Assembly: GCF_037042905.1 (NCBI RefSeq)
Contig: NC_087251.1
Coordinates: 26,660,001-26,724,000, forward strand
Origin: Lytechinus pictus
Lineage: Eukaryota
Direction of reading: 5' to 3'
DNA: 64,000 bases
Positions 10,601 to 47,151 of the stretch are shown here, piece after piece. The position numbers and the translations under genes were made by a program. The notes beneath the pieces were generated by a model. The model did not search any database and was not told the DNA's origin. It was given only the letters and a program-made list of their open reading frames with translations. Numbering within the stretch: the first letter of the stretch is position 1; the number at the start of each line of letters is the position of its first letter.

Positions 10601-13600
10601 CAATATCAATTTTTGCATCTAACCCATCTCCAGCACTGACATCTCCACCTAGTTTACCACTTCCCCCAATATCAATATCTGGCTTATCAATAGCAACATC
10701 TCCTCCAATGCCAAAGCCACCTCCACCTCCTCCGAGACTAATATCTGGTTCGTTGGCTTCAGCATCAATGTTGATTCCACTTCCAATTCCCATTTTCAGA
10801 TCTGGCTTATCAATATCTAGTCCACCTCCAGCTACATTGACATCTACTTCTCCATTTGTCCCAGCACCAATTCCACCTCCAATATCAAGTTTAGGCTTGT
10901 CAACATTGACATCAAGATCACCTCCTCCGATGTTCATTCCACCCCCAAATCCGATACCTCCACCTGGCTTACTGGACTTGATGTTGGCATCTATTTCAGG
11001 TTTAACAGAAATATCCACGTCTCCATTAGCATCAATCCCTCCTGATGGAAGCTTTACATCAGCTTCGGGTGCTTTGATATCTGCATCAGCTCCTCCTGAC
11101 CCTCCAAATCCAAGTTTTCCTCCAATCTTGAACTTTCCACTTTTATCTTTCTTTCCAGAGCCTTTTTTTCCTTTCTTGCCAAATCCAAATCCGAATCCAC
11201 CAGATGGGGCATCAATTTCAGGACCTTTGACATCAACAGAAGCATCTGGTACATTGATTTCTGGTTTAGCAGATTTGATGTCTATGTCAACCTGAGGTTT
11301 CACAGATATGTCTGCATCACCAATGCCACTAGATGGTAGATTGATATCTCCCTTTGGTGCTTCTGCATCTATATCTGCACCTCCTGAGCCTCCAAATCCT
11401 AATTTACCACCGATCTTGAATTTTCCCTTTTTGTCCTTCTTTCCAGAGCCTCCTTTCTTGTCTTTCTTTCCAAAGCCAATGCCAAAGCCACCTGATGGTG
11501 AATCTATGTCTGGACCTTTAAGATCCACATCGGGTGAACTGGCATCTCCACTTATATTGGCATCTCCCCCTATACCCGCCGAGATTTCTGGGGCATCAAG
11601 GTCAGCATCTCCATTCACATGTCCTTTGGTTCCACCTCCTAATTTCACCTTGCCAAAGTGAAATCCCCCTTTTCCCTTTTTGCCCGAACCTTTCTTCTTG
11701 CCACCAATATTAAAGTCGCCTCCAATGTCTCCTTTAGGCCCTTCAAGGTCAATATTCGCACCTTTTATATCACCAACACCAATGTCTGCACCGATGTTAG
11801 CCTCTGGCTTGGATGCTTTTATATTAATATCTGCTTCAGGCTTGACTACATCAAGGCCAGCATCTACATCAGCAGAACCAATGGTAATGCCACCTCCACC
11901 AAGACTAACCTTGCCATCTAATCCACCACTTAGATCACTTCCACCTTTTATTACAGGTCCTTTTGCATCAATGTCTGCTCCAATGCCACCACCAAGCTTG
12001 ATATCTTTCTTGTCATCATCAGAATCAGATCCTCCAAAGCCCAGATTCAGACCAAAGAAACCACCCTTTTTTTTGCTCTTTTTCTTCCCTTTACCATCAA
12101 GATTGACTTTGCCCTCTGGGGAACTCACACTCAGATCTCCTGACAAGTCTGCATCTCCACCACCTCCGAAGGAAACATCTGGACCTTTGATGTCAATTCC
12201 CATTCCTCCAGAGACATCAAGGTCAGGTTTCTTGACATTGAGACCAATTCCACCATCTCCTCCAATGCCACCTTCTATTCCACCACCAATGCCTGCAGTC
12301 ACATCCAAGTCTGGTTTAGTAATATCAATGCCCTTTCCACTCGCATCTATGTCTGGACCACTTAATGATGCTTTTCCAGATGGTAGTCCAATGCCTCCTT
12401 CCAGTGTCCCTTTTCCATCCAAATCGCCACCTAGCTTGATTCCACCATCTCCTCCTAGACCGCCCTTGACTCCTATTCCTGCATCAGGTCCCTCAACGTC
12501 AATACCCCCACCAATGCCACCTTTGATTCCACCATCTACATCACCTGATAGGTCTGGTTTGTCTGCTTTCAACTTTGCATCAATATCCGGGCCACTCACG
12601 GAAATGCCACCACTTGCATTGAGATCGGGTTTATCAAGTTCCAAAGCTCCATCTATTCCTCCACCCCCATTGATATCAGTTTTAACATCTGGTAATTCTC
12701 CATTTACACCAATATTCACATTAGGCCCTCTTACATTTAAGTCACTACCGGCATCTCCACCAAGCTTTGGACCTTTGAATCCAAATCCAAAACCTCCATG
12801 TCCATCACCATCTTCATCTGAACTTGAATCAGATGATGATGAAGATGTGTGATCACCACCACCTCCAAATCCAAGCTTGAAACCACCAAATCCAAACTTT
12901 TTGCTCTTTCTTTTCTTCTTCTTCCCCTTTACACCTGCTCCAATATTGACATCTGGTGCATTTACATCAATATCTCCTTTAACATCAGCATTGATATCAC
13001 CACCTAGTTTCCCTTCTGGGGCATCAAGTGAGGCACCACCACTTGGTAAATCAGCATCTCCTCCGGCCTTGAACTTGCCACCTATCCCATAGCCTTTATC
13101 TTTCTTTCCTCCTCCAGATATTTTGTACTTTCCTTTCTTTCCACCAAGGCTAAACCCAGCATCAGGAGCATCTACGTCAAGGCTGGCACCGTTAAGGGAA
13201 GCATCAGGGCCTTCAATTTTTCCACCTGACAGATCAAGATCTGGAGACTTAACATCAACTTTTCCTGCAAGGTCTGCATCTGGTTCTTTAGACCCAAACT
13301 TGAAACTTCCAAGCTTGAATTTTCCCTTTCCTTTGCTTCCTTTCTTTACTTTTGGTCCTTTAATATCTACATCAAGGTTAGCATTAGGGCCTTCATTATC
13401 AACATTTCCTACTGCTACTGTTCCTCCAAGTCCAGCTTCTCCAGAAGGCAAGTCAAAGCCTCCTCCAATATCAGGTTTGCCAGTCTTTACTTTGATATCA
13501 CCTTCAGGTTTCACCACATCAACATCTGCATCTACATCAAGATCGCCTTTGCCTCCAATTCCGAAATTAGGTCCATGAATTTTGGGCATTTTTATTCCGA

Positions 13601-16600
13601 ATCCAAATCCACCTTTACCTTTCTTTTTGCCATCGATGTCAAGATCAGGTCCACTTACATCTAGGTCTGGGCCCGAGATGTCACCTTCAACTTTTGGCAT
13701 TTTAATATCAACATCAGGTCCGTTACCATCAATGTTAAGTCCTCCGCCAATTCCTCCTCCAACATCTAATCCAGCTTCTCCGGAAGGCAGATCTACTCCT
13801 CCTCCAATGTTGGGCTTGCCAGTCTTCACTTTGATATCAGCTTCTGGTTTAGCGACATCGACATCTGCATCTACATCAATATCACCTTTGCCTCCAAATC
13901 CGAAATTAGGTCCATGAAATTTGGGCATTTTCAATCCAAAGCCAAATCCACCTTTACCCTTCTTCTTTCCACCAATGTCAAGATCAGGTCCACTAACATC
14001 GAGGTCTGGACCCGAGATGTCGCCTTCAACTTTTGGCCCTTTAATATCGACATCAGGTCCTTCCCCATCAATGTCAAGGCCTCCGCCAATTCCTCCTCCA
14101 ACATCAAATCCAGCTTCTCCAGAAGGCAGGTCTACTCCTCCTCCAATATCAGGCTTGCCAGTCTTTATTTTGATATCAGCTTCAGGTTTGGGGACATCGA
14201 CATCTGCATCTACATCAATATCGCCTTTGCCATCACCTCCAAATCCGAATTTGGGCATTTTCAATCCAAAGCCAAATCCACCTTTACCTTTCTTCTTTCC
14301 ACCGATGTCAAGATCAGGTCCACTGACATCTAGGTCTGGACCTGAGATGTCACCTTCAACTTTTGGTCCTTTAATATTGACATCAGGACCATCCCCATCA
14401 ATGTTAAGTCCTCCGCCAATTCCTCCTCCAACATCTAATCCAGCTTCTCCGGAAGGCAGATCTACTCCTCCTCCAATGTTGGGCTTGCCAGTCTTCACTT
14501 TGATATCAGCTTCAGGTTTGGGGACATCCACATCTGCATCTACATCAATATCACCTTTGCCTCCAAATCCAAAATTAGGTCCATGAATTTTGGGCATTTT
14601 CAACCCAAATCCAAATCCACCTTTACCCTTCTTCTTTCCACCAATGTCAAGATCAGGTCCACTAACATCGAGGTCTGGACTCGAGATGTCACCTTCAACC
14701 TCGGGCCCTTTAATATCAAAATCAGGACCTTCTCCGCCAATGTTAAGTCCTCCGCCAATTCCTCCTCCAATGCCACCTCCAACATCTAATCCAGCTTCTC
14801 CAGAAGGCAGATCTACTCCTCCTCCAATGTCAGGTTTGCCAGTCTTTACTTTGATATCAGCTTCAGGTTTGGGGACATCGACATCTGCATCTACATCAAT
14901 ATCGCCTTTGCCATCACCTCCAAATCCGAATTTGGGCATTTTCAATCCAAAGCCAAATCCACCTTTACCTTTCTTCTTTCCACCGATGTCAAGATCAGGT
15001 CCACTGACATCTAGGTCTGGACCTGAGATGTCACCTTCAACTTTTGGTCCTTTAATATTGACATCAGGACCATCCCCATCAATGTTAAGGCCTCCACCAA
15101 TTCCACCTCCAATTCCACCTCCAACATCTAACTCAGCTTCTCCAGAAGGCAGGTCAATTCCTCCTCCAATATCTGGCTTGCCAGCCTTCACTTTGATATC
15201 AGCTTCAGGTTTGGCAACATCGACATCTGCATCTACATCAATATCACCTTTGCCTCCAAATCCAAAATTAGGTCCATGAATTTTGGGCATTTTCAATCCA
15301 AATCCAAATCCACCTTTACCCTTCTTCTTTCCATCAATGTCAAGATCAGGTCCACTTACATCAAGGTCTGGACCTGAGATGTCACCTTCAACTTTTGGCC
15401 CTTTAATATCAAAATCAGGACCTTCTCCGTCAATGTTAAGTCCTCCGCCAATTCCTCCGCCAATTCCTCCTCCAATGCCACCTCCAACATCTAATCCAGC
15501 TTCTCCAGAAGGCAGATCTACTCCTCCTCCAATGTCAGGTTTGCCAGTCTTTACTTTGATATCAGCTTCAGGTTTGGGGACATCGACATCTGCATCTACA
15601 TCAATATCGCCTTTGCCATCACCTCCAAATCCGAATTTGGGCATTTTCAATCCAAAGCCAAATCCACCTTTACCCTTCTTCTTTCCATCAATGTCAAGAT
15701 CAGGTCCACTTACATCGAGGTCTGGACCCGAGATGTCACCTTCAACTTTTGGCCCTTTAATGTCAACATCAGGTCCGTCACCATCAATGTTAAGTCCTCC
15801 GCCAATTCCTCCTCCAACATCTAATCCAGCTTCTCCGGAAGGCAGATCTACTCCTCCTCCAATGTTGGGCTTGCCAGTCTTCACTTTGATATCAGCTTCT
15901 GGTTTTGCGACATCGACATCTGCATCTATATCAATATCACCTTTGCCTCCAAATCCGAAATTAGGCCCATGAAATTTGGGCATTTTCAATCCAAAGCCAA
16001 ATCCACCTTTACCCTTCTTCTTTCCACCAATGTCAAGATCAGGTCCACTTATATCGAGGTCTGGACCCGAGATGTCGCCTTCAACTTTTGGCCCTTTAAT
16101 ATCGACATCAGGTCCTTCCCCATCAATGTCAAGGCCTCCGCCAATTCCTCCTCCAACATCAAATCCAGCTTCTCCAGAAGGCAGGTCTACTCCTCCTCCA
16201 ATATCAGGCTTGCCAGTCTTCACTTTGATATCAGCTTCGGGTTTGGCGACATCGACATCTGCATCAATATCACCTTTGCCTCCAAATCCGAAATTAGGTC
16301 CATGAATTTTGGGCATTTTCAATCCAAATCCAAATCCACCCTTGCCCTTCTTCTTTCCACTGATGTCAAGATCAGGTCCACTAACATCGAGGTCTGGACT
16401 TGACATGTCACCTTCAACTTTTGGCCCCTCGACATCAACACCAGCACCAGCGCCTCCTATTGAAAGATCAGCATCTGGGCCTTTGCCATCAATATTTATC
16501 CCGCCTTCAAGTCCTCCTCCAATTCCTGCTCCTCCATCCAGTCCACCTCCAATATCTGGTCCCTCTGCTTTTAGTTTGGCATCTATTTCAGGTGCATCAA

Positions 16601-19600
16601 TATCAACACCTGCATTGAGGTCAACATCCCCTTTACCATGACCTCCAAACCCATGGAATTTGGGCATTTTTATGCCAAATCCAAATGAACCTTTGTGTTT
16701 TTTGTTTTTCTTCTTTCCACTGCCCCTGCCTTTGAATTTGGGACTTTTTAGGTCAGCATCAGGTCCATCAAAAGAAACATCTCCTTTAGGAAGGTCATTA
16801 TCAACATCGATTCCTGCTCCACCACTGACATTTAAGCCAACTCCTCCAGATGGAATGTCTACATCTCCACTGAATTCAGCATCAGGTTTCTTTATTTCAA
16901 CATCTCCATCTATATCAAGATCTCCTTTGCCTTTGCCTGAAAATCCGAAATTAGGTCCATGCAATTTGGGCATTTTTAATCCAAATCCAAATCCACCTTT
17001 GCCCTTCTTCTTTCCACCAATATCAAGATCATGTCCACTTACATCTAGGTCTGGACCCGAAATGTCACCTTCAACTTTTGGTCCTTTAAAATCAACATCA
17101 GGACCATCCCCATCAATGTTAAGGCCTCCACCAATTCCACCTCCAACATCAAATCCAGCTTCTCCAGAAGGCAGGTCTACTCCTCCTCCAATATCAGGCT
17201 TGCCAGTCTTCACTTTGATATCAGCTTCAGGTTTGGGGACATCGACATCTGCATCTACATCAATATCACCTTTGCCATCACCTCCAAATCCGAATTTAGG
17301 CATTTTCAACCCAAAGCCAAATCCGCCTTTACCCTTCTTCTTTCCACCAATGTCAAGATCAGGTCCACTTACATCGAGGTCTGGACCCGAGATGTCACCT
17401 TCAACTTTTGGCCCTTTAATATCAACATCAGGTCCGTCACCATCAATGTTAAGTCCTCCGCCAATCCCTCCTCCAATTCCTCCTCCAACATCTAATCCAG
17501 CTTGTCCGGAAGGCAGATCTACTCCTCCAATGTGAGGCTTACCAGTCTTCACTTTGATATCGGCTTCTGGTTTGGCAACATCAACATCTGCATCTACATC
17601 AATATCACCTTTGCCATCACCTCCAAATCCGAATTTAGGCATTTTCAATCCAAAGCCAAATCCGCCTTTACCCTTCTTCTTTCCACCAATGTCAAGATCA
17701 GGTCCACTTACATCAAGGTCTGGGCCCGATATGTCACCTTCAAATTTTGGCCCTTTCATGTCGACTTCAGGACCTTCCCCGCCAATGTTTAGTCCTCCGC
17801 CAATTCCTCCTCCAATTCCACCTCCAACATCTAATCCAGCTTCTCCAGAAGGCAGGTCTACTCCTCCTCCAATATCAGGCTTGCCAGTCTTCACTTTGAT
17901 ATCAGCTTCAGGTTTGACAACGTTGACATCAGCATCTACATCAATATCACCTTTGCCATCACCCCCAAATCCGAATTTGGGCATTTTCAATCCAAAGCCA
18001 AATCCACCTTTGCCCTCCTTTCCATCAATGTCGAGATCAGGTCCACTTACATCGAGGTCTGGACCCGAGATTTCACCTTCAACTTTTGGCCCTTTAATGT
18101 CAACATCAGGTCCATCGCCATCAATACTAAGTCCCCCTCCGATCTTTCCACCAATTCCTCCTCCAACATCTAATCCAGCTCCTCCAGAAGGCAGATCTAC
18201 TCCTCCTTCAATATCTGGCTTGCCAGTCTTCACTTTTATATTAGTTTCAGGTTTGGGGACATCGACATCTGCATCAACATCAATATCACCTTTGCCATCA
18301 CCTCCAAATCCAAATTTGGGCATTTTCAATCCAAAGCCAAATCCACCTTTACCCTTCTTTCCATCAATGTCGAGATCAGGTCCATTTACATCGAGGTCTG
18401 GACCCGAGATGTCACCTTCAACTTTTGGCCCTTTAATGTCAACATCAGGTCCGTCACCATCAATGTTAAGTCCTCCGCCAATTCCTCCTCCAACATCTAA
18501 TCCAGCTTCTCCGGAAGGTAGGTCTACTCCTCCAATATCAGGCTTGCCAGTCTTCACTTTGATATCAGCTTCAGGTTTGGGGACATCGACATCTGCATCT
18601 ACATCAATATCACCTTTGCCTCCAAATCCGAAATTTGGTCCATGAATTTTGGGCATTTTCAAGCCGAATCCAAATCCGCCTTTGCCCTTCTTCTTTCCAC
18701 TGATGTCAAGATCAGGTCCACTTACATCTAGGTCTGGACTCGAGATATCACCTTCAACTGTTGGTCCCTCAACACCAGCACCAGCACCTCCAATCGAAAG
18801 ATCAGCATCTGGGCCTTTGCCATCAACATTTATCCCACCTTCAACTCCTCCTCCAATTCCTGCTCCTCCATCCAGTCCACCTCCAATATCTGGTCCCTCG
18901 GCTTTTAGTTTGGCATCTATTTCAGGTGCATCAATATCAACACCTGCATTGACATCAACGTCCCCTTTACCATGACCTCCGAACCCATGGAATTTGGGCA
19001 TTTTAATGCCAAATCCAAATGAACCTTTGTGCTTTTTCTTTCCACTGCCTCGTCCTTTTACTTTTGGACCCTTCACACTAACATCAGGTCCATCTATCTC
19101 TCCTTTTGGTAGGTCAGCATCAATGCCACCTTTTGCCCCACCACTGACATCTAAGCCAACTCCTCCTGATGGAAGATCTGCATCTCCACTGGCATCAATA
19201 TTCAACCCTCCACCAATTCCTCCTCCAATGTCGGGCTTTTCAGTCTTAATGTCGATATCAGCTTCAGGTTTGTCAACATTCACATTTCCACCCACATCAA
19301 TATCACCTTTGCCACCACCACCAAAACTGAAGTTAGGTGCATTAAACTTTGGCATTTTCAGTCCAAATCCAAACCCTTTACTTTTTTTCTTTCCACTTCC
19401 ACTGATGTTAAGGTCTGGTCCATCTATATCTAGGTCGGGGTCAGAAATATCACCTTCAACTTTTGGTCCTTTTATGTCAACATCTGGACCTTTGGCATCA
19501 ATGTCTATTTCTCCAGTACCACCTCCTATTCCTCCACCGATGCCACCTCCAACATCGATTCCTACTCCTCCTGATGGCAATTTTGCACTTCCTCCCATAT

Positions 19601-22481
19601 TGATGTCAGGTTTCGCAGATTTGATGTTGATATCAGCTTCGGGAGTGGCAATATCAAGATCTGGACCCTTGACACCAATACCAGCTCCCCCTTGAAGACC
19701 ACCTCCTATTCCCCCAGAAGGTGCTTTAAAGTCACCATCAACTCCACCATCAATTCCTCCTCCAATATTTAATCCAACTCCTCCAGATGGCAGGTCAATG
19801 TCTCCACCGACCTTTGGTTTGGCAGTTTTTACATTAACATCAACTTCAGGCTTGGCAACATCAAGATCTGCATCAACCCCAGCTCCACCATCACCTCCAA
19901 ACTTGGGTCCTTTGAAGCCGAATCCAAACTTTCCCTTCTTTTTCCCTCCTGCATCGACATCTCCCTTAAGCTTTGGGGTATCAATGTCAACATCAGCTCC
20001 AGCCTTGAGATCAGAATCAGCCTCCATTTTAGCATCTCCTCCACCGCCAAAGTTGAAGTCAAATTTAGGGAACTTGAAACTAAACCCACCTTTCTTTTTT
20101 CTCTTCTTTGGTTTTACTCCAAGATCCATATCAAAGTCCGCATCTGGAGCATCAACCTTGCCTCCGATTCCGATCCCACCTGATGGCAAGGAAGGACCAT
20201 CTACGTCTCCTTTCATTTCTATACCACCAGAGGGTAAATCAGCACCTACATCTCCAGCTCCTCCAAGGCTTCCTTTTATACCAATGCCTCCTGATGGAAT
20301 GTCTGTATCTCCACCTATCTTTACTCCTCCAGATGGTAATTTACCTCCAATATCCCCTCCTCCACCAAGTCCTAGGCTTCCTTTGGGCATCTTCACATCT
20401 CCACCAGTCTTGAGGTCTCCAGATGGCATGTCCATTCCGCCACCTAGACCACCTCCAATACCTCCTCCAATTTTGATACCAGCAGATGGTAATTCACCTC
20501 CAATTTCCCCTCCTCCACCAAGTCCTATGCTCCCTTCGGGCATCTTTACGTCTCCACCAGCCTTGAGGTCTCCAGATGGCATGTCCATTCCGCCACCAAA
20601 ACCACCTCCAATACCTCCTCCAATGTTGACACCTGCAGATGGTAATTTACCTCCAATATCCCCTCCTCCACCAAATCCCATGCTCCCTTTGGGCATCTTT
20701 ACATCTCCACCAGCCTTGAGGTCTCCAGATGGCATGACCATTCCACCACCTAAACCACCTCCAATACCTCCTCCAATGTTGACACCTGCAGATGGTAATT
20801 TACCTCCAATATCCCCTCCTCCACCAAGTCCCATGCTCCCTTCAGGCATCTTTACGTCTCCACCAGCCTTGAGGTCTCCAGATGGCATGTCCATTCCGCC
20901 ACCTAAACCACCTCCAAAACCTCCTCCAATGTTGACACCAGCAGATGGTAATTTACCTCCAATATCCCCTCCTCCACCAAGTCCTATGCTTCCTTCAGGC
21001 AACTTTACATCTCCACCAGCCTTGAGGTCTCCAGATGGCATGTCCATTCCGCCACCTAAACCACCTCCAATACCTCCAATGTTGACACCAGCAGATGGTA
21101 ATTTACCTCCAATATCCCCTCTTCCACCAAGTCCCATGCTTCCTTCTGGCATCTTTACATCTCCACCAGCCTTGAGGTCTGCTGAAGGTACATCAACTCC
21201 ACCACCAATGCTCCCACCTGCATCAATGCCTCCAAGACCAAAGCTTCCTTTAGGAGCATCAATTCCTCCAGATGGTATGTTCACACCGACTCCCCCTGAT
21301 GTAAGATTGGCATCACCACCTGCTTTGATGCCTACTTTAGGAGCATTGATATCTATGCCTCCTCCCCCTCCAAGTCCTAATCCACCTTTAGGAGTATCAA
21401 TATCTCCTCCTACATTAACACCAGCTGATGGCCCATCACCTCCAATGTTTATGCCTGCAGATGGTAGATCAGCATCAACTTTGAGTCCTCCTCCAATTCC
21501 CCCTCCAATATCTCCAGATGGCAAATCTCCTTTCATATCCAAATCTCCCGATGGTAAACCAGCTTTTACATCTGCCTTTGGACTCTTCACCTTTCCACCG
21601 AATGATGGCATTTTGAAACCAAACTTAATTCCCTTTCCTTTTCTATCTACATCAGCATCTCCCTCAAGGCCTACATTTGCATCTGATCCATTTACATCAA
21701 CACCGACATCACCCCCAATACCACCACCGATTCCTCCTCCAATGTCTGGTCCTCCACCTATGGATACATCACCACTTGGAACTTCTCCCTTCACCCCACC
21801 ACCAATGTTTGCATTGCCTGATCCACTGGACTTGGGTGATGGCAAGGAGAATCCAAATCCAAATCCTTTCTTTGATTTTTTTGGTTTTCCCATTTTGACT
21901 GAAGCATCCACTTCTGGTTTGACTTCCAATGATGCATCACCGGATGGTAATGATGCACCAATATTTCCACTTGGAGCATCAATATCAAGTCCAGCAGAGG
22001 CACCACCTTGCGGTAAATCAGCATCCATTTTGGCATCACCAGAAATTCCTCCTCCAAATTTGGGTCCTTTTAGTTTTATGTTTCCTTCACCCTCATCATC
22101 AGACGAGTCACTGGACGACGATGATGAATCACCACCGAATCCCAATTTTGCAAAAAAACCTGGCCTCTTCCTCTTCCGTCGTTTTGATTTGGCTCCAAGG
22201 TTCAGTGAAACATCTGCATCTGGTAAAGAAGCATCCCCACTGATGTCTCCTTTGGCTGCTGCACCTCCTTTCTTTTTGAAGACTCCTCTTGGTAATGAGC
22301 CCTTCCCTTTTTTGCCAGCATGAATGTGTGGTGCATCGACGTTTAGACTGGCATCGCCTCTTCCTCCAACATCCATATCTACATCTCCTGCTCCTCCCAG
22401 GTCAACTTTGGCTGACGGAGCGTCTCCGCTTAGACCAACACCAGCTCCTGCTGAAGCATCGGCACCAGCATTACCACTCCC
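1668..22481 (-). CDS. Giant terminal coding exon (20,814 nt, 6,937 aa plus stop) of an AHNAK/periaxin-like repeat protein
   Basis: The 6,902-aa ORF stays open 35 codons further upstream to an acceptor (ttttcattttctttctttcttccaatgtataccAG|GGG AGT GGT; AG at 22483-22482), phase 0. Repeats such as DVDIKGPKVEGDISGPDLDV and LKMPKF resemble AHNAK/periaxin central repeats. TGA stop at 1670-1668. Confidence 0.93.
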   Translation of the reverse strand, partial: GSGNAGADASAGAGVGLSGDAPSAKVDLGGAGDVDMDVGGRGDASLNVDAPHIHAGKKGKGSLPRGVFKKKGGAAAKGDISGDASLPDADVSLNLGAKSKRRKRKRPGFFAKLGFGGDSSSSSSDSSDDEGEGNIKLKGPKFGGGISGDAKMDADLPQGGASAGLDIDAPSGNIGASLPSGDASLEVKPEVDASVKMGKPKKSKKGFGFGFSLPSPKSSGSGNANIGGGVKGEVPSGDVSIGGGPDIGGGIGGGIGGDVGVDVNGSDANVGLEGDADVDRKGKGIKFGFKMPSFGGKVKSPKADVKAGLPSGDLDMKGDLPSGDIGGGIGGGLKVDADLPSAGINIGGDGPSAGVNVGGDIDTPKGGLGLGGGGGIDINAPKVGIKAGGDANLTSGGVGVNIPSGGIDAPKGSFGLGGIDAGGSIGGGVDVPSADLKAGGDVKMPEGSMGLGGRGDIGGKLPSAGVNIGGIGGGLGGGMDMPSGDLKAGGDVKLPEGSIGLGGGGDIGGKLPSAGVNIGGGFGGGLGGGMDMPSGDLKAGGDVKMPEGSMGLGGGGDIGGKLPSAGVNIGGGIGGGLGGGMVMPSGDLKAGGDVKMPKGSMGFGGGGDIGGKLPSAGVNIGGGIGGGFGGGMDMPSGDLKAGGDVKMPEGSIGLGGGGEIGGELPSAGIKIGGGIGGGLGGGMDMPSGDLKTGGDVKMPKGSLGLGGGGDIGGKLPSGGVKIGGDTDIPSGGIGIKGSLGGAGDVGADLPSGGIEMKGDVDGPSLPSGGIGIGGKVDAPDADFDMDLGVKPKKRKKKGGFSFKFPKFDFNFGGGGDAKMEADSDLKAGADVDIDTPKLKGDVDAGGKKKGKFGFGFKGPKFGGDGGAGVDADLDVAKPEVDVNVKTAKPKVGGDIDLPSGGVGLNIGGGIDGGVDGDFKAPSGGIGGGLQGGAGIGVKGPDLDIATPEADINIKSAKPDINMGGSAKLPSGGVGIDVGGGIGGGIGGGTGEIDIDAKGPDVDIKGPKVEGDISDPDLDIDGPDLNISGSGKKKSKGFGFGLKMPKFNAPNFSFGGGGKGDIDVGGNVNVDKPEADIDIKTEKPDIGGGIGGGLNIDASGDADLPSGGVGLDVSGGAKGGIDADLPKGEIDGPDVSVKGPKVKGRGSGKKKHKGSFGFGIKMPKFHGFGGHGKGDVDVNAGVDIDAPEIDAKLKAEGPDIGGGLDGGAGIGGGVEGGINVDGKGPDADLSIGGAGAGVEGPTVEGDISSPDLDVSGPDLDISGKKKGKGGFGFGLKMPKIHGPNFGFGGKGDIDVDADVDVPKPEADIKVKTGKPDIGGVDLPSGEAGLDVGGGIGGGLNIDGDGPDVDIKGPKVEGDISGPDLDVNGPDLDIDGKKGKGGFGFGLKMPKFGFGGDGKGDIDVDADVDVPKPETNIKVKTGKPDIEGGVDLPSGGAGLDVGGGIGGKIGGGLSIDGDGPDVDIKGPKVEGEISGPDLDVSGPDLDIDGKEGKGGFGFGLKMPKFGFGGDGKGDIDVDADVNVVKPEADIKVKTGKPDIGGGVDLPSGEAGLDVGGGIGGGIGGGLNIGGEGPEVDMKGPKFEGDISGPDLDVSGPDLDIGGKKKGKGGFGFGLKMPKFGFGGDGKGDIDVDADVDVAKPEADIKVKTGKPHIGGVDLPSGQAGLDVGGGIGGGIGGGLNIDGDGPDVDIKGPKVEGDISGPDLDVSGPDLDIGGKKKGKGGFGFGLKMPKFGFGGDGKGDIDVDADVDVPKPEADIKVKTGKPDIGGGVDLPSGEAGFDVGGGIGGGLNIDGDGPDVDFKGPKVEGDISGPDLDVSGHDLDIGGKKKGKGGFGFGLKMPKLHGPNFGFSGKGKGDLDIDGDVEIKKPDAEFSGDVDIPSGGVGLNVSGGAGIDVDNDLPKGDVSFDGPDADLKSPKFKGRGSGKKKNKKHKGSFGFGIKMPKFHGFGGHGKGDVDLNAGVDIDAPEIDAKLKAEGPDIGGGLDGGAGIGGGLEGGINIDGKGPDADLSIGGAGAGVDVEGPKVEGDMSSPDLDVSGPDLDISGKKKGKGGFGFGLKMPKIHGPNFGFGGKGDIDADVDVAKPEADIKVKTGKPDIGGGVDLPSGEAGFDVGGGIGGGLDIDGEGPDVDIKGPKVEGDISGPDLDISGPDLDIGGKKKGKGGFGFGLKMPKFHGPNFGFGGKGDIDIDADVDVAKPEADIKVKTGKPNIGGGVDLPSGEAGLDVGGGIGGGLNIDGDGPDVDIKGPKVEGDISGPDLDVSGPDLDIDGKKKGKGGFGFGLKMPKFGFGGDGKGDIDVDADVDVPKPEADIKVKTGKPDIGGGVDLPSGEAGLDVGGGIGGGIGGGIGGGLNIDGEGPDFDIKGPKVEGDISGPDLDVSGPDLDIDGKKKGKGGFGFGLKMPKIHGPNFGFGGKGDIDVDADVDVAKPEADIKVKAGKPDIGGGIDLPSGEAELDVGGGIGGGIGGGLNIDGDGPDVNIKGPKVEGDISGPDLDVSGPDLDIGGKKKGKGGFGFGLKMPKFGFGGDGKGDIDVDADVDVPKPEADIKVKTGKPDIGGGVDLPSGEAGLDVGGGIGGGIGGGLNIGGEGPDFDIKGPEVEGDISSPDLDVSGPDLDIGGKKKGKGGFGFGLKMPKIHGPNFGFGGKGDIDVDADVDVPKPEADIKVKTGKPNIGGGVDLPSGEAGLDVGGGIGGGLNIDGDGPDVNIKGPKVEGDISGPDLDVSGPDLDIGGKKKGKGGFGFGLKMPKFGFGGDGKGDIDVDADVDVPKPEADIKIKTGKPDIGGGVDLPSGEAGFDVGGGIGGGLDIDGEGPDVDIKGPKVEGDISGPDLDVSGPDLDIGGKKKGKGGFGFGLKMPKFHGPNFGFGGKGDIDVDADVDVAKPEADIKVKTGKPNIGGGVDLPSGEAGLDVGGGIGGGLNIDGNGPDVDIKMPKVEGDISGPDLDVSGPDLDIDGKKKGKGGFGFGIKMPKIHGPNFGIGGKGDLDVDADVDVVKPEGDIKVKTGKPDIGGGFDLPSGEAGLGGTVAVGNVDNEGPNANLDVDIKGPKVKKGSKGKGKFKLGSFKFGSKEPDADLAGKVDVKSPDLDLSGGKIEGPDASLNGASLDVDAPDAGFSLGGKKGKYKISGGGKKDKGYGIGGKFKAGGDADLPSGGASLDAPEGKLGGDINADVKGDIDVNAPDVNIGAGVKGKKKKRKSKKFGFGGFKLGFGGGGDHTSSSSSDSSSDEDGDGHGGFGFGFKGPKLGGDAGSDLNVRGPNVNIGVNGELPDVKTDINGGGGIDGALELDKPDLNASGGISVSGPDIDAKLKADKPDLSGDVDGGIKGGIGGGIDVEGPDAGIGVKGGLGGDGGIKLGGDLDGKGTLEGGIGLPSGKASLSGPDIDASGKGIDITKPDLDVTAGIGGGIEGGIGGDGGIGLNVKKPDLDVSGGMGIDIKGPDVSFGGGGDADLSGDLSVSSPEGKVNLDGKGKKKSKKKGGFFGLNLGFGGSDSDDDKKDIKLGGGIGADIDAKGPVIKGGSDLSGGLDGKVSLGGGGITIGSADVDAGLDVVKPEADINIKASKPEANIGADIGVGDIKGANIDLEGPKGDIGGDFNIGGKKKGSGKKGKGGFHFGKVKLGGGTKGHVNGDADLDAPEISAGIGGDANISGDASSPDVDLKGPDIDSPSGGFGIGFGKKDKKGGSGKKDKKGKFKIGGKLGFGGSGGADIDAEAPKGDINLPSSGIGDADISVKPQVDIDIKSAKPEINVPDASVDVKGPEIDAPSGGFGFGFGKKGKKGSGKKDKSGKFKIGGKLGFGGSGGADADIKAPEADVKLPSGGIDANGDVDISVKPEIDANIKSSKPGGGIGFGGGMNIGGGDLDVNVDKPKLDIGGGIGAGTNGEVDVNVAGGGLDIDKPDLKMGIGSGINIDAEANEPDISLGGGGGGFGIGGDVAIDKPDIDIGGSGKLGGDVSAGDGLDAKIDIDRPDIGAKKDKKGRFGFGFGFGKSKKDGSSSSSSSSSSSSDSSDSEEKESKKKKKKKGKKGFGFGFGFGGGGKGDAKVDIPKPKIDVEGGGAKSDTKLGGGIGIGGSLGGGGVDIDANVGKPEISLGGGLGGLGGGVDAGVGKPDINLRGGGALGGGISVDKPDVSIGGGGDLGGDADISLGGGLSGGLDIDANAEKPEIGSSGGGFGIGGGGINVEANVDKPDFSMGGGGLSGSLGGGLGGSGGVDVDANVDKPDFSMGGGADLDASVGKPDISLGGVLSGGLDIDANAEKPEIGSSGGGFGIGGGGINVEANVDKPDFSMGGGGLSGSLGGGLGGSGGVDVDANVGKPDINLGGGFGGLGGGVDAGVGKPDINLRGGGELGGGISVDKPDVSIGGGGDLGGDADADKKGKFGFGFGFGKSKDGSSSSSSSDSSDSEGKKKSKKEKKKKGKGFGFGFGFGGGDAKVDIPKPDADVGGKIGIGGDMGGDGSLDISSNVDKPDFSMGGGADLDASVGKPDISLGGGLSGGLDIDANAEKPEIGSSGGGFGIGGGGINVEANVDKPDFSMGGGGLSGSLGGGLGGSGGVDVDANVDKPDFSMGGGADLDASVGKPDLSLGGGLSGGLDIDANAEKPEIGSSGGGFGIGGGGINVEANVDKPDFSMGGGGLSGSLGGGLGGSGGVDVDANVGKPDINLGGGFGGLGGGVDAGVGKPDINLRGGGELGGGISVNKPDVSIGGGGDLGGDADADADKKGKFGFGFGFGKSKDGSSSSSSSDSSDSEGKKKSKKEKKKKGKGFGFGFGFGGGDAEVDIPKPDADVGGKIGIGGDMGGDGSLDISSNVDKPDFSMGGGADLDASVGKPDISLGGGLSGGLDIDANAEKPEIGSSGGGFGIGGGGINVEANVDKPDFSMGGGGLSGSLGGGLGGSGGVDVDANVDKPDFSMGGGADLDASVGKPDLSLGGGLSGGLDIDANAEKPEIGSSGGGFGIGGGGINVEANVDKPDFSMGGGGLSGSLGGGLGGSGGVDVDANVGKPDINLGGEFGGLGGGVDAGVGKPDINLRGGGELGGGISVDKPDVSIGGGGDLGGDADADADKKGKFGFGFGFGKSKDGSSSSSSSDSSDSEGKKKSKKEKKKKGKGFGFGFGFGGGDAEVDIPKPDADVGGKIGIGGDMGGDGSLDISSNVDKPDFSMGGGADLDASVGKPDVSLGGGLSGGLDIDANAEKPEIGSSGGGFGIGGGGINVEANVDKPDFSMGGGGLSGSLGGGLGGSGGVDVDANVDKPDISIDGQGGIGGESNMHMGGFGGGIGGIGSGSLGIGGVDAEGKGDVKLGLGGDVSTEGDLSSNIPSASIGGDGTVGADISAGGDAGAGINVDMPGGGVSIGGSLGVGGGKKEKKKKKKAKKEKKSGFSLLGAIGIGNESSSSSSSSSDSEGFFSKVKEAIGLDSDSDKDDKEENPNSNNNNSNILNVNNNNSDDVEVQENHNNNANDDEVPGAAGTSSPHWKSGGKHKDSSDKAKRRGLGKLFGGKRKPRDVMLEIPAEAAEGRPSDEQRKPLSELQSRTDAAPSQQVTVPSQYSRAEFLPRSPEAAAETVEVPKSRNKKRRAPLPPAERPASLSHDSISECSWPSTTSLEPVPVTASKSTTSPASVPQDKIPRIEMPATEKVTVSSTVGEVSCEHPQSAQPSPLNASARVLSVKPLPDFCPSSSSSTALPVGVDEEDSIHHENMHEIYEVVKSMPLPYGAPPPKPKRVSASAAETDQSEEPVSAEAYVPINQPVEVHQPTPHNMTLGLDVITGEDEPDVILPTGDSPKKKVESEKWQSETSGDSLLGEILREYSTGNIPSSNISGDLSDDSRTMKASRETGTVVSKTMEVASIKREVKETKPNENVTNRTENTRQDASFPVEVLDIDGQSALQQEEDLPYVRRKSISLKDIDKRSGSGTSLALDMAKGAAILKRDRSVDNRRMLREGLSHLMGAPIDTGNHRQDTEMGNSVESEEMNDKTEFENTRTEHKSGILFEASLHMEEETDHNVSEDVTENIENKKENDEDKLQAMVEQDTLDDSEFMHAMSERGHSPISAKQDETTEPDILSGKVDMVQSTIQDGNKSTTPNIHTRKECRISPDIQQDTDREQRHVLLTGANEIVSDFTITSKDNTIDRGKNIEIAGSSPETPPSAKEKQSGWDVLKSRNNRGTHTQEHSSTGKPLTQDQKELAKLASRSMVRSTLNMFGQDKMQPESENLSRASKRLPKVRPDQTHVALKDKVEEKPRQLTSSTMPAGSDVASPWRDVLKKKTSFDAKKSYNDPIKTDEAKSEVWWKDSLMKRKSNEKTDDNKISSSVPQTKKKQETDEKVSVPWKDVKLKTTKVKTASESKMKDANTDNTKANSSTNVPWKEALKKKKTEAEEKSKAYESRPRKVEDEHEEEHFNLIMQARKNIRRLSRNPVDTDISITQVASGVIIPKSASSPNGVSAISETTDQDTTVGTEDNGMITVETGQPTEVVSDFTDNQKSQLHKTQMTEEELLDTVEILSDQSTDDTKEMLQNMRQKSSGSDEDKIKSDDTNHLTRFREIHQRTQSILNVIKAQNSLVDARTSSIHVQTKSAPNLRDDSTITLRDSEAKARLREKRRKARSSPNIDFDWTAVRNMINESDCAGEDTDTTLTDASTIDVPWNMSPSLANQARMIRKQKKRSYVAKRGLFPLSSTDDFSDKDSSSENDMSDVSTTTVIPRMDSGFSDISSSVEPDAIISSNKPLWKHGHASTASLEDKLFGRVNVKSKAFLPDSRVSRTSSLKESSGLSSSMTNLSTQPSASDESLPDDVKEFMAMEKMDLQKLLLQQQQEMRLLRQQMQAVQLQAVQTSTNLTTATSSVPSQQSSVPGQPPVAGLPYMFTHPSMVIAPTTSSMVPPVQQPMFYVHPRMPPQSVQLSGMYPVSNYQPFPTVPFPMQGHPMTQAMPGGIQPVPVQPVTTASSGTPEQRLSE
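6740..10600 (-). repeat. Coding tandem array C: near-identical 1,029-nt (343-aa) super-repeats with an internal 285-nt sub-repeat
   Basis: The anchor gcatctacgtctactcctcctgatcc occurs at 6772, 7801, 8830 and 9853 (periods 1029/1029/1023), with an offset copy at 7516. Confidence 0.92.
13400..19700 (-). repeat. Coding tandem array B: about 18 AHNAK-like units of ~330-350 nt (110-116 aa)
   Basis: FGFG(L/I)KMPK occurs 18 times, most often paired with KGPKVEGDISGPDLDVSGPDLDI. Confidence 0.9.
20280..21180 (-). repeat. Coding tandem array A: about 6 x 153 nt (51 aa, GGDVKMPEGSMGLGGGGDIGGKLPSAGVNIGGG...MDMPSGDLKA)
   Basis: The anchor ccttgaggtct recurs at 20561, 20714, 20867, 21020 and 21170. Confidence 0.9.
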
Positions 22482-27760: not shown

Positions 27761-28082
27761 AAGGCCTAATAATACAAAGTGAAAATTGCAACTTAATCAA
27801 AAGCCATGTGAAACCTGCATATATAGGCTAAAATATGTTCTATATTCGTATCTAAATTTACCCATTTATTGCTTTACAAGCGACTGAAATGCAAATCTCA
27901 GTATTTCTTAATGTTAATATGAGAAAATTTTCAGGGCTGCATGGGGTTATTTCGCCCATTTTTTTTTTATCAAACGTTGAAAAGCACATCATTATTTCTA
28001 AAAAGAAATCTCTGGAATAAACTTTGGGCTCAAAGTTTGACCAACATCTCCATGAAAAGGGGGCCTGGTCCATGATACTTAC

Positions 28083-28184
28083 TTGCGTCTGTATCAAGGT
28101 CTGGTTGAGCCTGTGCGAATTCGTCTACTGCTAGTGGCGCCTTTCCTTTTACTGCGGCTCCACCACCTGCACTTGCTCCGGCAC
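28083..28184 (-). CDS. Internal coding exon 2 (102 nt, symmetric phase 1; GAGASAGGGAAVKGKAPLAVDEFAQAQPDLDTDA)
   Basis: Acceptor ctatttctgcAG|GT and perfect donor A|GTAAGT at 28082-28077. The frame is open, and the segment is GC-richer than the AT-rich intron around it. Confidence 0.82.
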
Positions 28185-41478: not shown

Positions 41479-43735
41479 ATATAGACCACACATTGCCATG
41501 CATTTTGGCTTATGTCGCCCTCACATATTTGAAATGACACCGAATGGAGGTAATGTGGGAAATTTAATGAAAGTAGGCCTTTATAAAATACAGAACCTAT
41601 GGGCCTACAATCATCCAATTTTATGCATCAGCGTGATCAGTAATAATTTCATTTCGGTTCATATCGCACTAGAATGACATAAGCCAGTTAACCAAAGACT
41701 GACAGAGAAGTGTGGAAGTACATAACACTATTAATTAGGCATGTACTGCTGCCTATAACTTAACCCCTTCAATGTTGTAAAACAAAATAATTAGCAGATT
41801 TAACGTGAAAGCACTTTAGGTGTGCAGAATGTGGCCATAATAACGCTGTTGGCGGTGAATAAATGATCATTCATTCATCATTCATAATAGAGGGGGTTTA
41901 CATTTAGAATACTATAAATCATTATTTCGCGTATGGAATGCCAATAAATATAATGTTCACACTCTATGATTATTGATGGACAATAACGGAATGAAAAGCG
42001 ATGTGTACCACCCAAGCACAGAACACGATTGATCATGCCCTGTGGATAGGATAAGCAGGCTTTTTGGTTTAACTTCTGAGCTTTTCATTCAGACTAAAAC
42101 AACATGTTCCATGGGAAAGTTACTTGATAGGAAGTTTTCTTTTTTCATGAATCCCGAGCTCTCGATTTGTTTTGCCTTTGACTTCATCATCTATCTTCAG
42201 CAAAAGTTTAGAGCAACTTGACTGGAAACCCTCCACGCCCCCTGGGTGCGTTATAATGCATCTTATGCCAACCCAGACACGTAACGTCAAGATACTTGGA
42301 GAGAAACTAAATAGATTCATGCCGAGGACGTACTTTCACGAATCTTTAAAATTTTCGTGTTTTTTTTTTCTACGTATAGGAAAACAAGTTAGCTTTAGTG
42401 AAAAAATAGAATTTAATTCTCTTTTGGACCGCGTGGAGCGAGGCCAACCTAATCCATAACCCCTTCGATCACGCTGTGCATTCATACTACACAAGCAAAC
42501 ATTCAACAAGTAGTAGCAGGCAGGGCGTGTCAATGGACCGTACCATTCATAATGAAGGGAGTTCGAAAGTATTGCTGTCGGAATCCTTCCAACTCCGCCT
42601 ACGGAAGTCAGTGTTTCTTTGAGTAAACATTTACTTAACATAACCCAAGATTTTATCTGATAATAGGGTATATCTGATTATCAAAATGTCTGCAAATTTT
42701 TGAACAAACAAGGCAAACCCATTTCTGTTGCAATTTTGGGTACATACATACACCCCACAAATGGAAGTGTCCTGCGTGCTCAGTGGGTATGAAAGGCAAC
42801 TATTCTTCACAAACCGCAAAGAATAGATGAAGTCTTTTGAGTATTGCCAAAAAAGTATAATAGAGTGGGGGAATAGAAAACAACATCGCTTTTCACTGTG
42901 TATGCACAACCCAAGGCCAAAAATGGACGCCATTGTGGTGCTTTACGATACTTGAGATTGGAAGCCATCGACATTAAGTTTCTACGACATATATATACAA
43001 AGTTTTCCAGTGATGGTCCAAGAGTGGTATCTTTGATTATATCCGCCAGGAATATGCCCCCTCCCACCTTGCTCCTCACGTGCTACATAGTGTGGTATAT
43101 AGCATTCACAAAAGTTCTTTAAAAATACTTAGTAAAAATATAATAATGATTTTGCCTTAATATGCCCACAATGTATTCACAACATAACTTCCGCTGATAA
43201 TGTGTGCGCGCAAAAAGTTGTACCAAACTTTTAAACTAATAAACAGTTTGGTGAAATTTGTTTACGTACCTAAGCGAATAGAAGATGTTAAAGATCCCCG
43301 GCAGCACTGCATAATGGTTTCCAAAATGTTGGTATCATCGGAAAAGTGGCTTTGCGAGCCCCCACTCATATTGCACAAGATGGGATGGGCTTATCCCTCG
43401 GTATTGTGATCCTCGCTAAACCGCGACATTCCTTTTAACTGCTCAACTATAGGTCGCCCCAGCACTAATTACACAAAGCACCCATTTTCATTTCTCTTCA
43501 AATCGACTCTTTTTTCTGCTTGTGTGAAGCGAAGCGAGTCTTGTGAAGCACAACGTGAATTGAAAGTTTGATTGTGTCTAAGTCCAGACTCATCATGCAT
43601 AGGACCTTCAGTGGTTACATTTACCCCCCCCCCCTTCTCCTTTATCTATACACCCTATAAGCCATTGTGGTGGACCTCAGTAATCCCCGGATAAATTATA
43701 CTAAGGAATGGTGATGAAAATAGGATATTATTTAC

Positions 43736-44051
43736 CTCCTTCTGCGCTCAATCCTGCTCCCAGTCCGACGCCCACGCCCACTCCAGCCCCGGCACCAGCT
43801 GATGTGTCGATATCCATGTCGATGTTGGGCTTCTCGGCTTCCACACTGACATGTGCGCCCGCTTCGGCTCCTCGTCCTCCTCGTTGCTTACTTCGTCGTT
43901 CCCGGCCCGATCGACGAAATGAGTTCCGAAGAACACGATTGAAACTTAGCTTTCTCTTCTTCTTAGCAGGCTCCCCCGCCGCCACATCGGCATCCACAGA
44001 GGCTGACGCCGATGCCTCGACCGAAAAACTTGCCGAGGCTTTATTCCCCAT
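43736..44051 (-). CDS. First coding exon (105 codons + 1 nt): N-myristoylation signal MGNKAS and basic MARCKS-effector-like segment
   Basis: ATG in strong context (AGC ATG G) with an in-frame upstream TAA at 44081-44079. Donor GGA G|GTAAAT at 43735, phase 1, compatible with exon 28184. The peptide ends in EKPNIDMDID and GAGVGVG, matching the giant-exon style. Confidence 0.85.
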
Positions 44052-44261
44052 GCTGCTCGCTCGAGTGATCCAAACTAATTACAGCATGTATAGTTTGTCG
44101 AGTTACTCGTCTGGTTAGCAGTTGTTTTGTCACACGTTGATGCTGGTTCAGTTTAGTGTCCAAGCACTGGGTGAAGTCTCGATTAGGTTGACGAAGATTC
44201 ACGGGCTCGAGTGCGATCAGGAGTGGATGGACGACGCTGTGTTTTCACAGCCCTTGAAGAC
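44052..44261 (-). other. 5' UTR part of the first coding exon, containing a minimal uORF (ATG CTG TAA, 44087-44079)
   Basis: Polypyrimidine tract and acceptor (tccttatcccgttttcttctctgcattgaaatcctacAG|G; AG at 44263-44262) imply an upstream non-coding exon. Confidence 0.6.
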
Positions 44262-46937: not shown

Positions 46938-47151
46938 NNNNNNNNNNNNNNNNNNNNNNNNNNNNNNNNNNNNNNNNNNNNNNNNNNNNNNNNNNNNNNN
47001 NNNNNNNNNNNNNNNNNNNNNNNNNNNNNNNNNNNNNNNNNNNNNNNNNNNNNNNNNNNNNNNNNNNNNNNNNNNNNNNNNNNNNNNNNNNNNNNNNNNN
47101 NNNNNNNNNNNNNNNNNNNNNNNNNNNNNNNNNNNNNNNNNNNNNNNNNNN
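46938..47151. other. Assembly gap (214 N)
   Basis: Run of N. Confidence 1.

What the first reader, a model, noticed from the sequence alone, without database searches (positions are those of the whole stretch)
43880..44051. Myristoyl-electrostatic switch: MGNKAS plus PAKKKRKLSFNRVLRNSFRRSGRERRSKQR
Seen: Gly2 with Ser6 fits the MGxxxS myristoylation consensus. An Ala/Ser/acidic spacer precedes a ~30-aa polybasic segment with two Phe and S-F-x-R sites. Known: MARCKS combines N-myristate with the effector domain KKKKKRFSFKKSFKLSGFSFKK, which binds PIP2, calmodulin and actin and is released by PKC. PAKKKRKL also resembles the SV40 NLS PKKKRKV. Inference: PKC- or Ca2+/calmodulin-controlled membrane release, possibly with nuclear shuttling.
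Basis: partly seen in the sequence, partly recalled or inferred. Interest (0 to 1): 0.72.

Follow-up and report, generated by a model that had tools for sequence, protein, structure and literature searches.

The report
Lipid-anchor head of giant urchin protein
The stretch is the conserved start of a sea-urchin gene for a roughly 7,100-residue AHNAK-like repeat protein. It carries a fatty-acid attachment signal followed by a strongly basic, serine-studded patch, which most likely pins the giant protein to the inner face of the cell membrane in a way kinases could loosen.

Summary
On the minus strand, 44051-43880 encodes MGNKAS, an acidic Ala/Ser spacer, and a 30-residue patch of net charge +13 with four Ser and two Phe.

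It is not a small MARCKS-like gene. It is the first coding exon (44051-43736, phase-1 donor) of a sea-urchin gene. The model continues through two small exons (28184-28083 and 23992-23901) into a 20.8-kb exon (22481-1668), giving an open 7,107-aa protein. RNA reads and contigs from four runs confirm the last two splice joints. The joint from exon 1 to the second exon is inferred only.

The giant exon resembles vertebrate AHNAK repeats far beyond what composition explains, but no PDZ domain is present.

In five diverged orthologous lineages, M1 G2 N3 S6 A7 S8 and the core KK[KR]R[KR]LSF...RRS are invariant, while the rest of the exon is only 39-56% identical.

Best reading (about 0.55): a myristate plus basic-patch membrane anchor, weakened by phosphorylation at embedded PKA/PKC-type sites. 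Calmodulin control and nuclear shuttling were not tested. Pfam MARCKS does not match.

The same four-exon model was noted earlier in this scan (s1-317493).

The parts
43736..44051 (-). First coding exon: 316 nt, 105 codons plus 1 base, with a phase-1 donor. It encodes the disordered head of the giant protein.
   Evidence: Sequence and frame. RNA-type runs hold 0.52-0.83 of the sampled words of 43700-44300, and one run recorded as oligo-dT RNA-Seq holds 0.65. AlphaFold2 gives mean pLDDT 55 with a single helix at residues 37-45.
44034..44051 (-). Codons 1-6, MGNKAS: the N-myristoylation signal (Gly2, Asn3, Ser6).
   Evidence: M1 G2 N3 S6 A7 S8 are invariant in five lineages; one lineage reads MGNQES, which still fits the pattern.
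43971..44033 (-). Residues 7-27: an Ala/Ser/Val/acidic spacer. Residues 1-27 together have net charge -3. Its length varies among orthologues.
43872..43970 (-). Residues 28-60: an Arg/Lys patch of net charge +14. It has Ser36, Ser44, Ser48 and Ser54 in basophilic-kinase contexts, plus Leu35, Phe37, Val40, Leu41 and Phe45. The KKKRK core also fits a monopartite NLS.
   Evidence: A nascent helix is predicted at residues 37-45.
43734..43735 (-). GT of the exon-1 splice donor (GGAG|GTAAAT), phase 1.
   Evidence: A phase-1 G|GTRAG donor is present in the four orthologous loci read without a frameshift (L002, L026, L027, L028).
28083..28184 (-). Second coding exon: 102 nt, phase 1 to 1.
   Evidence: The joint 23990/28081, with GT..AG ends, is seen in the X1 and X5 contigs and in X21 and X22 raw RNA reads. 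A similar 72-nt phase 1-to-1 exon lies 9.7 kb downstream of exon 1 in the orthologous contig L002.
23901..23992 (-). Third coding exon: 92 nt, phase 1 to 0.
   Evidence: Joints 22480/23900 and 23990/28081.
1668..22481 (-). Giant 20.8-kb exon of Gly/Asp/Lys-rich AHNAK-like repeats plus a non-repetitive tail of about 900 aa. The stop codon is at 1668-1670.
44079..44087 (-). ATG CTG TAA, in frame with the main ATG and 12 codons upstream of it. It supplies the upstream in-frame stop. It acts as a two-codon upstream ORF only if it lies within the 5' UTR.
   Evidence: The transcription start was not mapped.
43890..43891 (-). Candidate internal alternative donor (GACGAA|GTAAGC, phase 1) just after the basic patch. 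Its use has not been shown.
   Evidence: A similarly placed phase-1 GTAAGC occurs in L026.

Best explanation
The stretch encodes the N-terminal head of a sea-urchin AHNAK-like giant scaffold protein (model 7,107 aa).

Proposed mechanism (inferred):
1. After the initiator Met is removed, Gly2 is N-myristoylated as the protein is made.
2. Roughly 25-40 residues further on, a conserved Arg/Lys patch of +8 to +14, carrying Phe, Leu and Val, lies on the acidic inner leaflet of the membrane.
3. Myristate and the patch together tether the N-terminus of the giant protein to the membrane, as in MARCKS, Src, AKAP12 and Drosophila Akap200.
4. Phosphorylating the serines embedded in the patch removes positive charge and loosens this end. 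The invariant R-[RK]-L-S-F is a PKA/AGC-type site, and N-S-F-R-R-S-G is PKC-like.
5. The protein has many further Lys-rich/FGFG clusters, so the switch probably changes how the head is attached rather than releasing the whole molecule.

Shown here: the sequence, its conservation, the start codon, the exon phases, two of the three splice joints, AHNAK-like repeats, the absence of a PDZ domain, and predicted disorder.

Inferred only: myristoylation, lipid binding, phosphorylation, and the exon 1 to exon 2 joint.
For: - Sequence and charge.
- Conservation: M1 G2 N3 S6 A7 S8 and K31 K32 R33 L35 S36 F37 L41 R46 R47 S48 R53 are invariant in five lineages that are otherwise 39-56% identical. The best 30-aa window has net charge +8 to +14, with 4-5 Ser, in every lineage.
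- Start codon: A at -3, G at +4 and an in-frame upstream stop in all six loci read. A phase-1 donor in five of them; the sixth, L001, has a frameshift relative to its lineage mate L026.
- Gene model: exons 1, A, B and the giant exon give 21,324 nt and 7,107 aa with no internal stop. Skipping exon B, or both small exons, breaks the frame.
- RNA: the A-to-B and B-to-giant joints appear in two contig runs and two raw-read RNA runs.
- Synteny: an exon-A-like exon follows exon 1 in the orthologous contig L002 with the same phases.
- The module is single-copy in the 812-Mb genome.
- The head is predicted to be disordered, with one short helix over F37-F45.
- Resemblance to the MARCKS effector domain exceeds composition.
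- Precedents for myristate plus a polybasic, PKC-regulated anchor: PMC4607481 and PMC5831198.
Against: - The X1 contig stops at 28186, which fits exon 1 ending in AG only weakly.
- Nothing experimental supports myristoylation, lipid binding or phosphorylation.
- The patch has only two Phe, against five in the MARCKS effector domain, and it is Arg-rich rather than Lys-rich.
- The same invariant core also fits a classical NLS and loosely fits an RVxF-type phosphatase-1 docking motif, so conservation alone does not single out membrane binding.
- The whole protein has net charge -296 and at least 14 other strongly basic clusters. A simple on/off switch for the whole molecule is therefore unlikely.
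Confidence: 0.55

Rival explanations
1. The conserved KK[KR]R[KR]L core is mainly a classical nuclear localisation signal. Phosphorylation of the adjacent Ser would control import, as is reported for vertebrate AHNAK (a 'nucleoprotein') and for the MARCKS effector domain.
For: The core fits K-K/R-x-K/R and is invariant. The MARCKS effector domain and related basic segments of DGK-zeta, BASP1 and AKAP12 are reported to act as NLSs (PMC4607481).
Against: An invariant myristoylation signal on the same head argues for a membrane location. A protein of about 700 kDa with many other K-rich clusters does not obviously need this one for import. No test was run.
Confidence: 0.15
2. The patch is chiefly a docking and phosphorylation hub rather than a lipid binder. 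R-[RK]-L-S-F would serve as a PKA site, and loosely as an RVxF-type phosphatase-1 docking motif silenced by phosphorylating the Ser. Calmodulin might bind the helix at residues 37-45.
For: R-[RK]-L-S-F is invariant. A short helix is predicted at residues 37-45 with F37, V40, L41 and F45 towards one side (the helical geometry is my own reckoning).
Against: Leu in place of Val/Ile is uncommon in RVxF motifs (own knowledge). No canonical calmodulin spacing is evident.
Confidence: 0.1
3. Exon 1 is not, or not only, the head of the giant protein. It could make a separate small myristoylated MARCKS-like protein of about 107 aa by intron retention and early polyadenylation, or it could be one of several alternative first exons.
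For: Reading through the donor gives a stop after two codons. The X1 transcript contig breaks exactly at the 5' edge of exon A, which suggests a branch in the assembly graph. Vertebrate periaxin has short and long isoforms that share the same head (PMC7072810).
Against: Every exon phase matches. Exon 1 is followed by an exon-A-like exon with the same phases in a diverged orthologue. The early stop after the donor is not conserved: P0005 and P0006 read on for 40-55 residues. The tail of exon 1 has the same Gly/Ala/Val/Asp composition as exons A and B and the start of the giant exon.
Confidence: 0.08
4. A chance motif in a low-complexity disordered region, with no specific function.
For: The short motifs involved are common. 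No domain model matches.
Against: Twenty positions are invariant, clustered in the two motifs, while the spacer and tail diverge freely.
Confidence: 0.03

Closest known systems
[quoted passage not shown]
   Same: Both have an N-terminal MG...S myristoylation signal, an Ala-rich acidic disordered sequence, and a basic Ser/Phe segment of about 25-30 aa. The local order is similar: KK+R+(F/L)SF ... SF++SG (effector-domain sequence taken from PMC4607481). The expected mechanism is the same: myristate plus electrostatics, reversed by Ser phosphorylation.
   Different: There is no match to Pfam MARCKS PF02063. The patch is Arg-rich with two Phe rather than five. It sits about 27-40 residues from Gly2 rather than about 150. 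It heads a 7,107-aa repeat protein rather than forming a protein of about 300 aa.
AHNAK / AHNAK2 / periaxin family
   Same: Both have one giant central exon and hundreds of short acidic/basic repeat motifs (KMPKF, GPKVK, D-x-D-x, PSGD). The best database hits are shark AHNAK (E 3e-63). Scores are 230-825 bits, against less than -150 for locally shuffled AHNAK, with 29-32% identity in alignments. Vertebrate AHNAK is a plasma-membrane-associated scaffold (PMC2171952, abstract).
   Different: No PDZ domain was found anywhere in the model, nor in the 20 kb upstream. The shark N-terminus does score as PDZ. The non-repetitive C-terminal 950 aa has no detectable relatives. Here the head is a lipid/electrostatic anchor instead.
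AKAP12 (gravin/SSeCKS) and Drosophila Akap200
   Same: Both are large, acidic, N-myristoylated scaffolds with MARCKS-like polybasic domains that bind membrane, actin and Ca2+/calmodulin and are phosphorylated by PKC (PMC5831198). They are the closest functional analogues of a long scaffold with a myristate-plus-polybasic head.
   Different: No sequence relationship was detected. No PKA RII-binding helix was looked for or found here. The body of this protein is AHNAK-like repeats.
Src-family kinases and K-Ras4B (lipid plus polybasic anchors)
   Same: Both use a two-signal membrane anchor: a lipid plus a basic cluster, with phosphorylation inside or beside the cluster lowering affinity (own knowledge).
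   Different: In those proteins the basic cluster directly adjoins the lipid. Here an acidic spacer of 21-33 residues separates them.

Membership tests
N-myristoyltransferase substrates | Gly at position 2 after the initiator Met; an uncharged, non-aromatic residue at position 3; Ser/Thr/Ala/Gly/Cys/Asn at position 6; no Pro at position 7. | tested here: met
   MGNKASA in the window. The pattern is also met in all five lineages, including MGNQESA. The pattern itself was recalled from PROSITE PS00008 (own knowledge).
N-myristoyltransferase substrates | Myristate is actually attached to Gly2. | not testable with these tools
   This needs metabolic labelling or mass spectrometry.
MARCKS family (Pfam PF02063) | A match to the family profile, which covers the N-terminal region, the MH2 region and the effector domain. 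| tested here: not met
   No hit at E up to 1, and none at E up to 10 for any of the five orthologues.
MARCKS family (Pfam PF02063) | A basic effector domain with Ser-Phe repeats. | tested here: inconclusive
   Local alignment to the printed effector domain scores 34-46, against shuffle means of 19-28. The fraction of shuffles reaching the observed score is 0.001-0.07, and the orthologues are not independent of each other.
MARCKS family (Pfam PF02063) | A small acidic protein of about 200-330 residues. | tested here: not met
   The model is 7,107 aa.
AHNAK/periaxin family | An N-terminal PDZ domain. | tested here: not met
   No PDZ hit in exon 1, in the giant exon, or by tblastn across the window. 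Positive control: the shark AHNAK N-terminus hits PF00595.
AHNAK/periaxin family | A giant single exon encoding tandem AHNAK-type repeats. | tested here: met
   A 20.8-kb exon with tandem units of 153, 285 and 339 nt. Similarity to shark AHNAK goes far beyond local composition.
AHNAK/periaxin family | A related C-terminal domain (S100A10/annexin A2-binding region, NLS/NES). | tested here: inconclusive
   No relatives of the last 950 aa were found. The shark C-terminus aligns only to the repeat region. The short S100A10-binding motif was not searched for.
Classical monopartite NLS | A K-K/R-x-K/R core that importin-alpha can reach. | tested here: met
   KKKRK or KKRR is invariant. This is a sequence pattern only; function is untested.

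The most novel reading that the evidence does not exclude
Echinoderm AHNAK-type giant scaffolds replaced the PDZ head with a MARCKS-like head of myristate plus a phospho-regulated basic patch. Together with the roughly 15-40 Lys-rich/FGFG clusters along the body, the protein would act as a lipid-tethered, multivalent sequestering agent for acidic lipids (a 'super-MARCKS'). Its attachment to the cell cortex would be reset by Ca2+/PKC/PKA signalling, for example at egg activation or membrane wound repair.
Probability: 0.2. Interest if true: 0.7.

Novelty: new variant of a known kind. Interest (0 to 1): 0.45.

Why it matters
AHNAK proteins are giant, poorly understood membrane-associated scaffolds. 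They are linked to membrane repair, calcium channels and cell-contact architecture, and have been studied almost only in vertebrates, where a PDZ domain forms the head.

A sea-urchin relative with a conserved lipid-plus-charge head offers two things:
- An independent, experimentally simple handle on how such a giant is attached to the membrane: a 105-residue head that can be fused to GFP and injected into eggs.
- A natural case of domain replacement at the head of the family.

Urchin eggs are a classical system for Ca2+/PKC-driven cortical remodelling and membrane resealing, so the predicted regulation can be tested directly.

If only the ordinary part holds (myristate plus a basic anchor), this is one more member of a well-known class of membrane anchors.

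Tried and rejected
- Word-indexed homologue search with the non-repetitive C-terminal 950 aa of the giant exon: no hit among proteins of 3,800-12,000 aa. ESM Atlas feature search on the same part and on the head: no usable hit.
- Pfam on the head, on all of the giant exon and on all five orthologous heads: nothing.
- A scan of metagenome contigs for a 20-mer spanning the predicted exon 1/exon A junction returned 16 contigs. None extends beyond the 20-mer (19-33 of 120 flanking positions identical), so all are chance matches.
- Pfam MARCKS against the whole genome in six frames: no match. The control genomes were also silent, so this says nothing about whether the urchin has a true MARCKS.
- Search for further conserved exons between exon 1 and exon A, by tblastn of L002 and L026 open frames against window 22001-44300: only exon 1 matched.
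- Direct splicing of exon 1 to the giant exon, or exon 1 to A to giant exon: out of frame with many stops. Rejected.
- Exon 1 to B to giant exon stays open. Skipping of exon A therefore cannot be excluded.
- Calmodulin or importin complex prediction: not run.
The transcription start, coverage of exon 1 and use of the donor at 43736 were therefore not seen directly.

Full report
**What is in the sequence.** The peptide lies on the minus strand. The ATG is at 44051, and the listed ORF runs to 43728.
- Residues 1-6 are MGNKAS.
- Residues 7-27 are an Ala/Ser/Val/acidic spacer. Residues 1-27 have net charge -3.
- Residues 28-57 hold 14 K/R, 1 E, 4 Ser and 5 hydrophobic residues (Leu35, Phe37, Val40, Leu41, Phe45), for a net charge of +13. 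Over residues 28-60 the net charge is +14.
- The ATG has A at -3 and G at +4, and an in-frame TAA ten codons upstream.

**What gene it belongs to.** The window is animal DNA of 30-48% G+C. Sea-urchin sperm bindin (Pfam PF02084) is found in the same 812-Mb assembly at E 1.5e-67.

The open frame ends two codons into an intron. The exon stops at 43736, at GGAG|GTAAAT, in phase 1.

Downstream on the same strand lies a 6,902-aa ORF (22376-1668), open from 22523. It is rich in Gly, Asp and Lys and is built of tandem units of 153, 285 and 339 nt.

Two small open segments with the same Gly/Ala/Ser/Val composition have good splice sites:
- 28184-28083: 102 nt, phase 1 to 1.
- 23992-23901: 92 nt, phase 1 to 0.

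The giant exon begins at 22481 in phase 0. Joining exon 1, these two exons and the giant exon gives 21,324 nt and 7,107 aa with no internal stop. Leaving out the 92-nt exon, or both small exons, breaks the frame at once.

**RNA evidence.** Eighteen runs hold half or more of the sampled words of 43700-44300. One of them is recorded as oligo-dT RNA-Seq of a marine sample and holds 0.65.

I laid two contig runs and two raw-read RNA runs on 22300-28299. They show two joints, both with GT..AG ends on the minus strand:
- 22480/23900, skipping 1,419 bases.
- 23990/28081, skipping 4,090 bases.

The support is one 1,020-nt contig at depth 583 in X1, contigs in X5, and 8-14 reads per joint in each of X21 and X22. 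So the two small exons and the giant exon form one transcript.

The joint from exon 1 to the 102-nt exon was not observed. It rests on four points:
- The phases match.
- The composition is shared across the exons.
- A diverged orthologous contig (L002) has its own exon 1 with a phase-1 donor. About 9.7 kb downstream it has a 72-nt phase 1-to-1 exon encoding a similar VKGK..APLA.DE...D.D peptide.
- Weakly, the X1 contig ends two bases (AG) beyond the exon edge. That is what a graph branch between an unspliced form (...CAG) and a form spliced from exon 1 (...GAG) would give.

No other conserved exon was found between the two.

**What the giant protein is.** Pfam finds nothing in any part of it. 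The best hits of the first 420 residues of the giant ORF, among proteins of 3,800-12,000 aa, are shark proteins named AHNAK (E 3e-63 and weaker).

Three urchin repeat segments score 230-825 bits against one such shark protein. The maximum against 200 locally shuffled copies of it is below -150, so the likeness is in the order of residues and not just composition. Alignments show 29-32% identity with shared KMPKF, GPKVK and D-x-D-x motifs.

The shark N-terminus scores as a PDZ domain. No PDZ is present in the urchin model or in the 20 kb upstream. The last 950 residues have no detectable relatives.

I therefore call it AHNAK-like, not a proven AHNAK orthologue. An 'AHNK' gene, named by similarity, is reported as a top marker of an epithelial cell supra-cluster in a regenerating sea-cucumber intestine (PMC11244903). 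So echinoderm AHNAK-like genes are already annotated, but I found no paper on their N-termini.

**Conservation of the head.** An exhaustive profile-free search and a profile search found short predicted proteins from other assemblies that share the head. They fall into five lineages, counting the window.

Where DNA could be read, each has A at -3, G at +4 and an upstream in-frame stop. Each has a phase-1 G|GTRAG donor, except L001, which has a frameshift relative to its lineage mate L026. Two predictions that seemed to start at MDVS are preceded by MGNKASAS in the DNA or in a cluster mate.

In the five-lineage alignment, identity to the window is 39-56%. M1 G2 N3 S6 A7 S8 A17 V19 P28 K31 K32 R33 L35 S36 F37 L41 R46 R47 S48 R53 are invariant.

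The spacer varies in length and sequence. The best 30-residue window keeps a net charge of +8 to +14 with 4-5 Ser and 5-6 hydrophobic residues. DNA identity upstream of the ATG is patchy, while ATGGGNAATAAAGC is conserved. The module is single-copy in this genome.

**Structure.** AlphaFold2 with the five-sequence alignment gives mean pLDDT 55 and pTM 0.11. The only predicted element is a helix at residues 37-45. The head is therefore a disordered segment with a nascent amphipathic helix inside the basic patch.

**Mechanism.** An invariant Gly2/Ser6 signal at a well-supported start codon has few explanations other than N-myristoylation. From established work on MARCKS, Src and related proteins (McLaughlin and Aderem 1995, cited in PMC4607481; own knowledge), myristate alone binds membranes weakly. 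A cluster of about 13 basic residues adds comparable energy on acidic membranes. Ser phosphorylation within the cluster reverses that contribution.

The invariant R-[RK]-L-S-F is a textbook PKA/AGC consensus. N-S-F-R-R-S-G has basic residues at -2, +2 and +3 and Phe at +1, which is PKC-like (own knowledge).

The order of residues resembles the MARCKS effector domain more than composition predicts, by 1.7-4.7 SD. Pfam MARCKS does not match. I read this as convergence on the same kind of device, or at most as a very old shared module.

The body of the protein carries at least 14 more windows of net charge +9 or more. These are mostly Lys-rich with FGFG, on a backbone of net charge -296. The head switch would therefore modulate attachment of one end rather than free the molecule.

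**What remains open.** Calmodulin binding and nuclear shuttling are neither supported nor excluded. The same core is a formal NLS, and the MARCKS effector domain itself has been reported to act as one (PMC4607481).

**Verdict.**
- The context is new: the motif heads an AHNAK-like giant that lacks the PDZ domain.
- I rate it a new variant of a known kind, of moderate interest.

Noticed in passing
window 25600-26110 (intron between the 102-nt and 92-nt exons): This segment has very high RNA depth on both strands: over 1,000 in raw reads and up to 150,000 summed contig depth. It shows many variant letters, inverted joints and loose ends. It looks like a dispersed, highly transcribed repeat or transposon fragment, not part of the gene.
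   Followed up: no
window 28200-28299 and 24900-25100, 27300-27700: Smaller islands of RNA coverage inside the introns. One example is depth 6,132 in X1 at 28255, just upstream of the exon A acceptor. They are probably repeats or unspliced RNA.
   Followed up: no
window 43890-43892 (minus strand): An internal GTAAGC in phase 1 lies right after the basic patch (GACGAA|GTAAGC). The orthologous contig L026 has a similarly placed phase-1 GTAAGC at +184. If used, it would join the basic patch directly to exon A and drop residues 54-105.
   Followed up: partly
window 1671-4520 (minus strand): The last 950 or so residues of the giant ORF are non-repetitive and rich in Ser, Thr and Lys, and end in a Gln/Pro/Met-rich tail. 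No relatives were found in any search.
   Followed up: partly
window 6330-22300 (minus strand): Lys-rich/FGFG clusters, often followed by poly-Ser/Asp runs, recur along the repeat body. Fifteen 25-aa windows across the whole 7,107-aa model have net charge +9 or more: one in the exon-1 head and 14 in this exon. This is the subject of another first-stage note (s1-317703).
   Followed up: partly
window 46938-47151: A run of 214 N (gap or masked). A 164-aa plus-strand ORF (46931-47425) overlaps it.
   Followed up: no
window 22309, 22428, 22463, 23964, 28138: All RNA reads of 'organism B' (X21, X22) differ from the window at these exonic positions, while contigs of 'organism A' do not. Organism B is a close relative or another population, and it uses the same splice joints.
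   Followed up: no
L001 2820-2960: This Logan contig has a frameshift relative to its close relative L026/P0006 in the tail of exon 1. It is probably an assembly error.
   Followed up: partly
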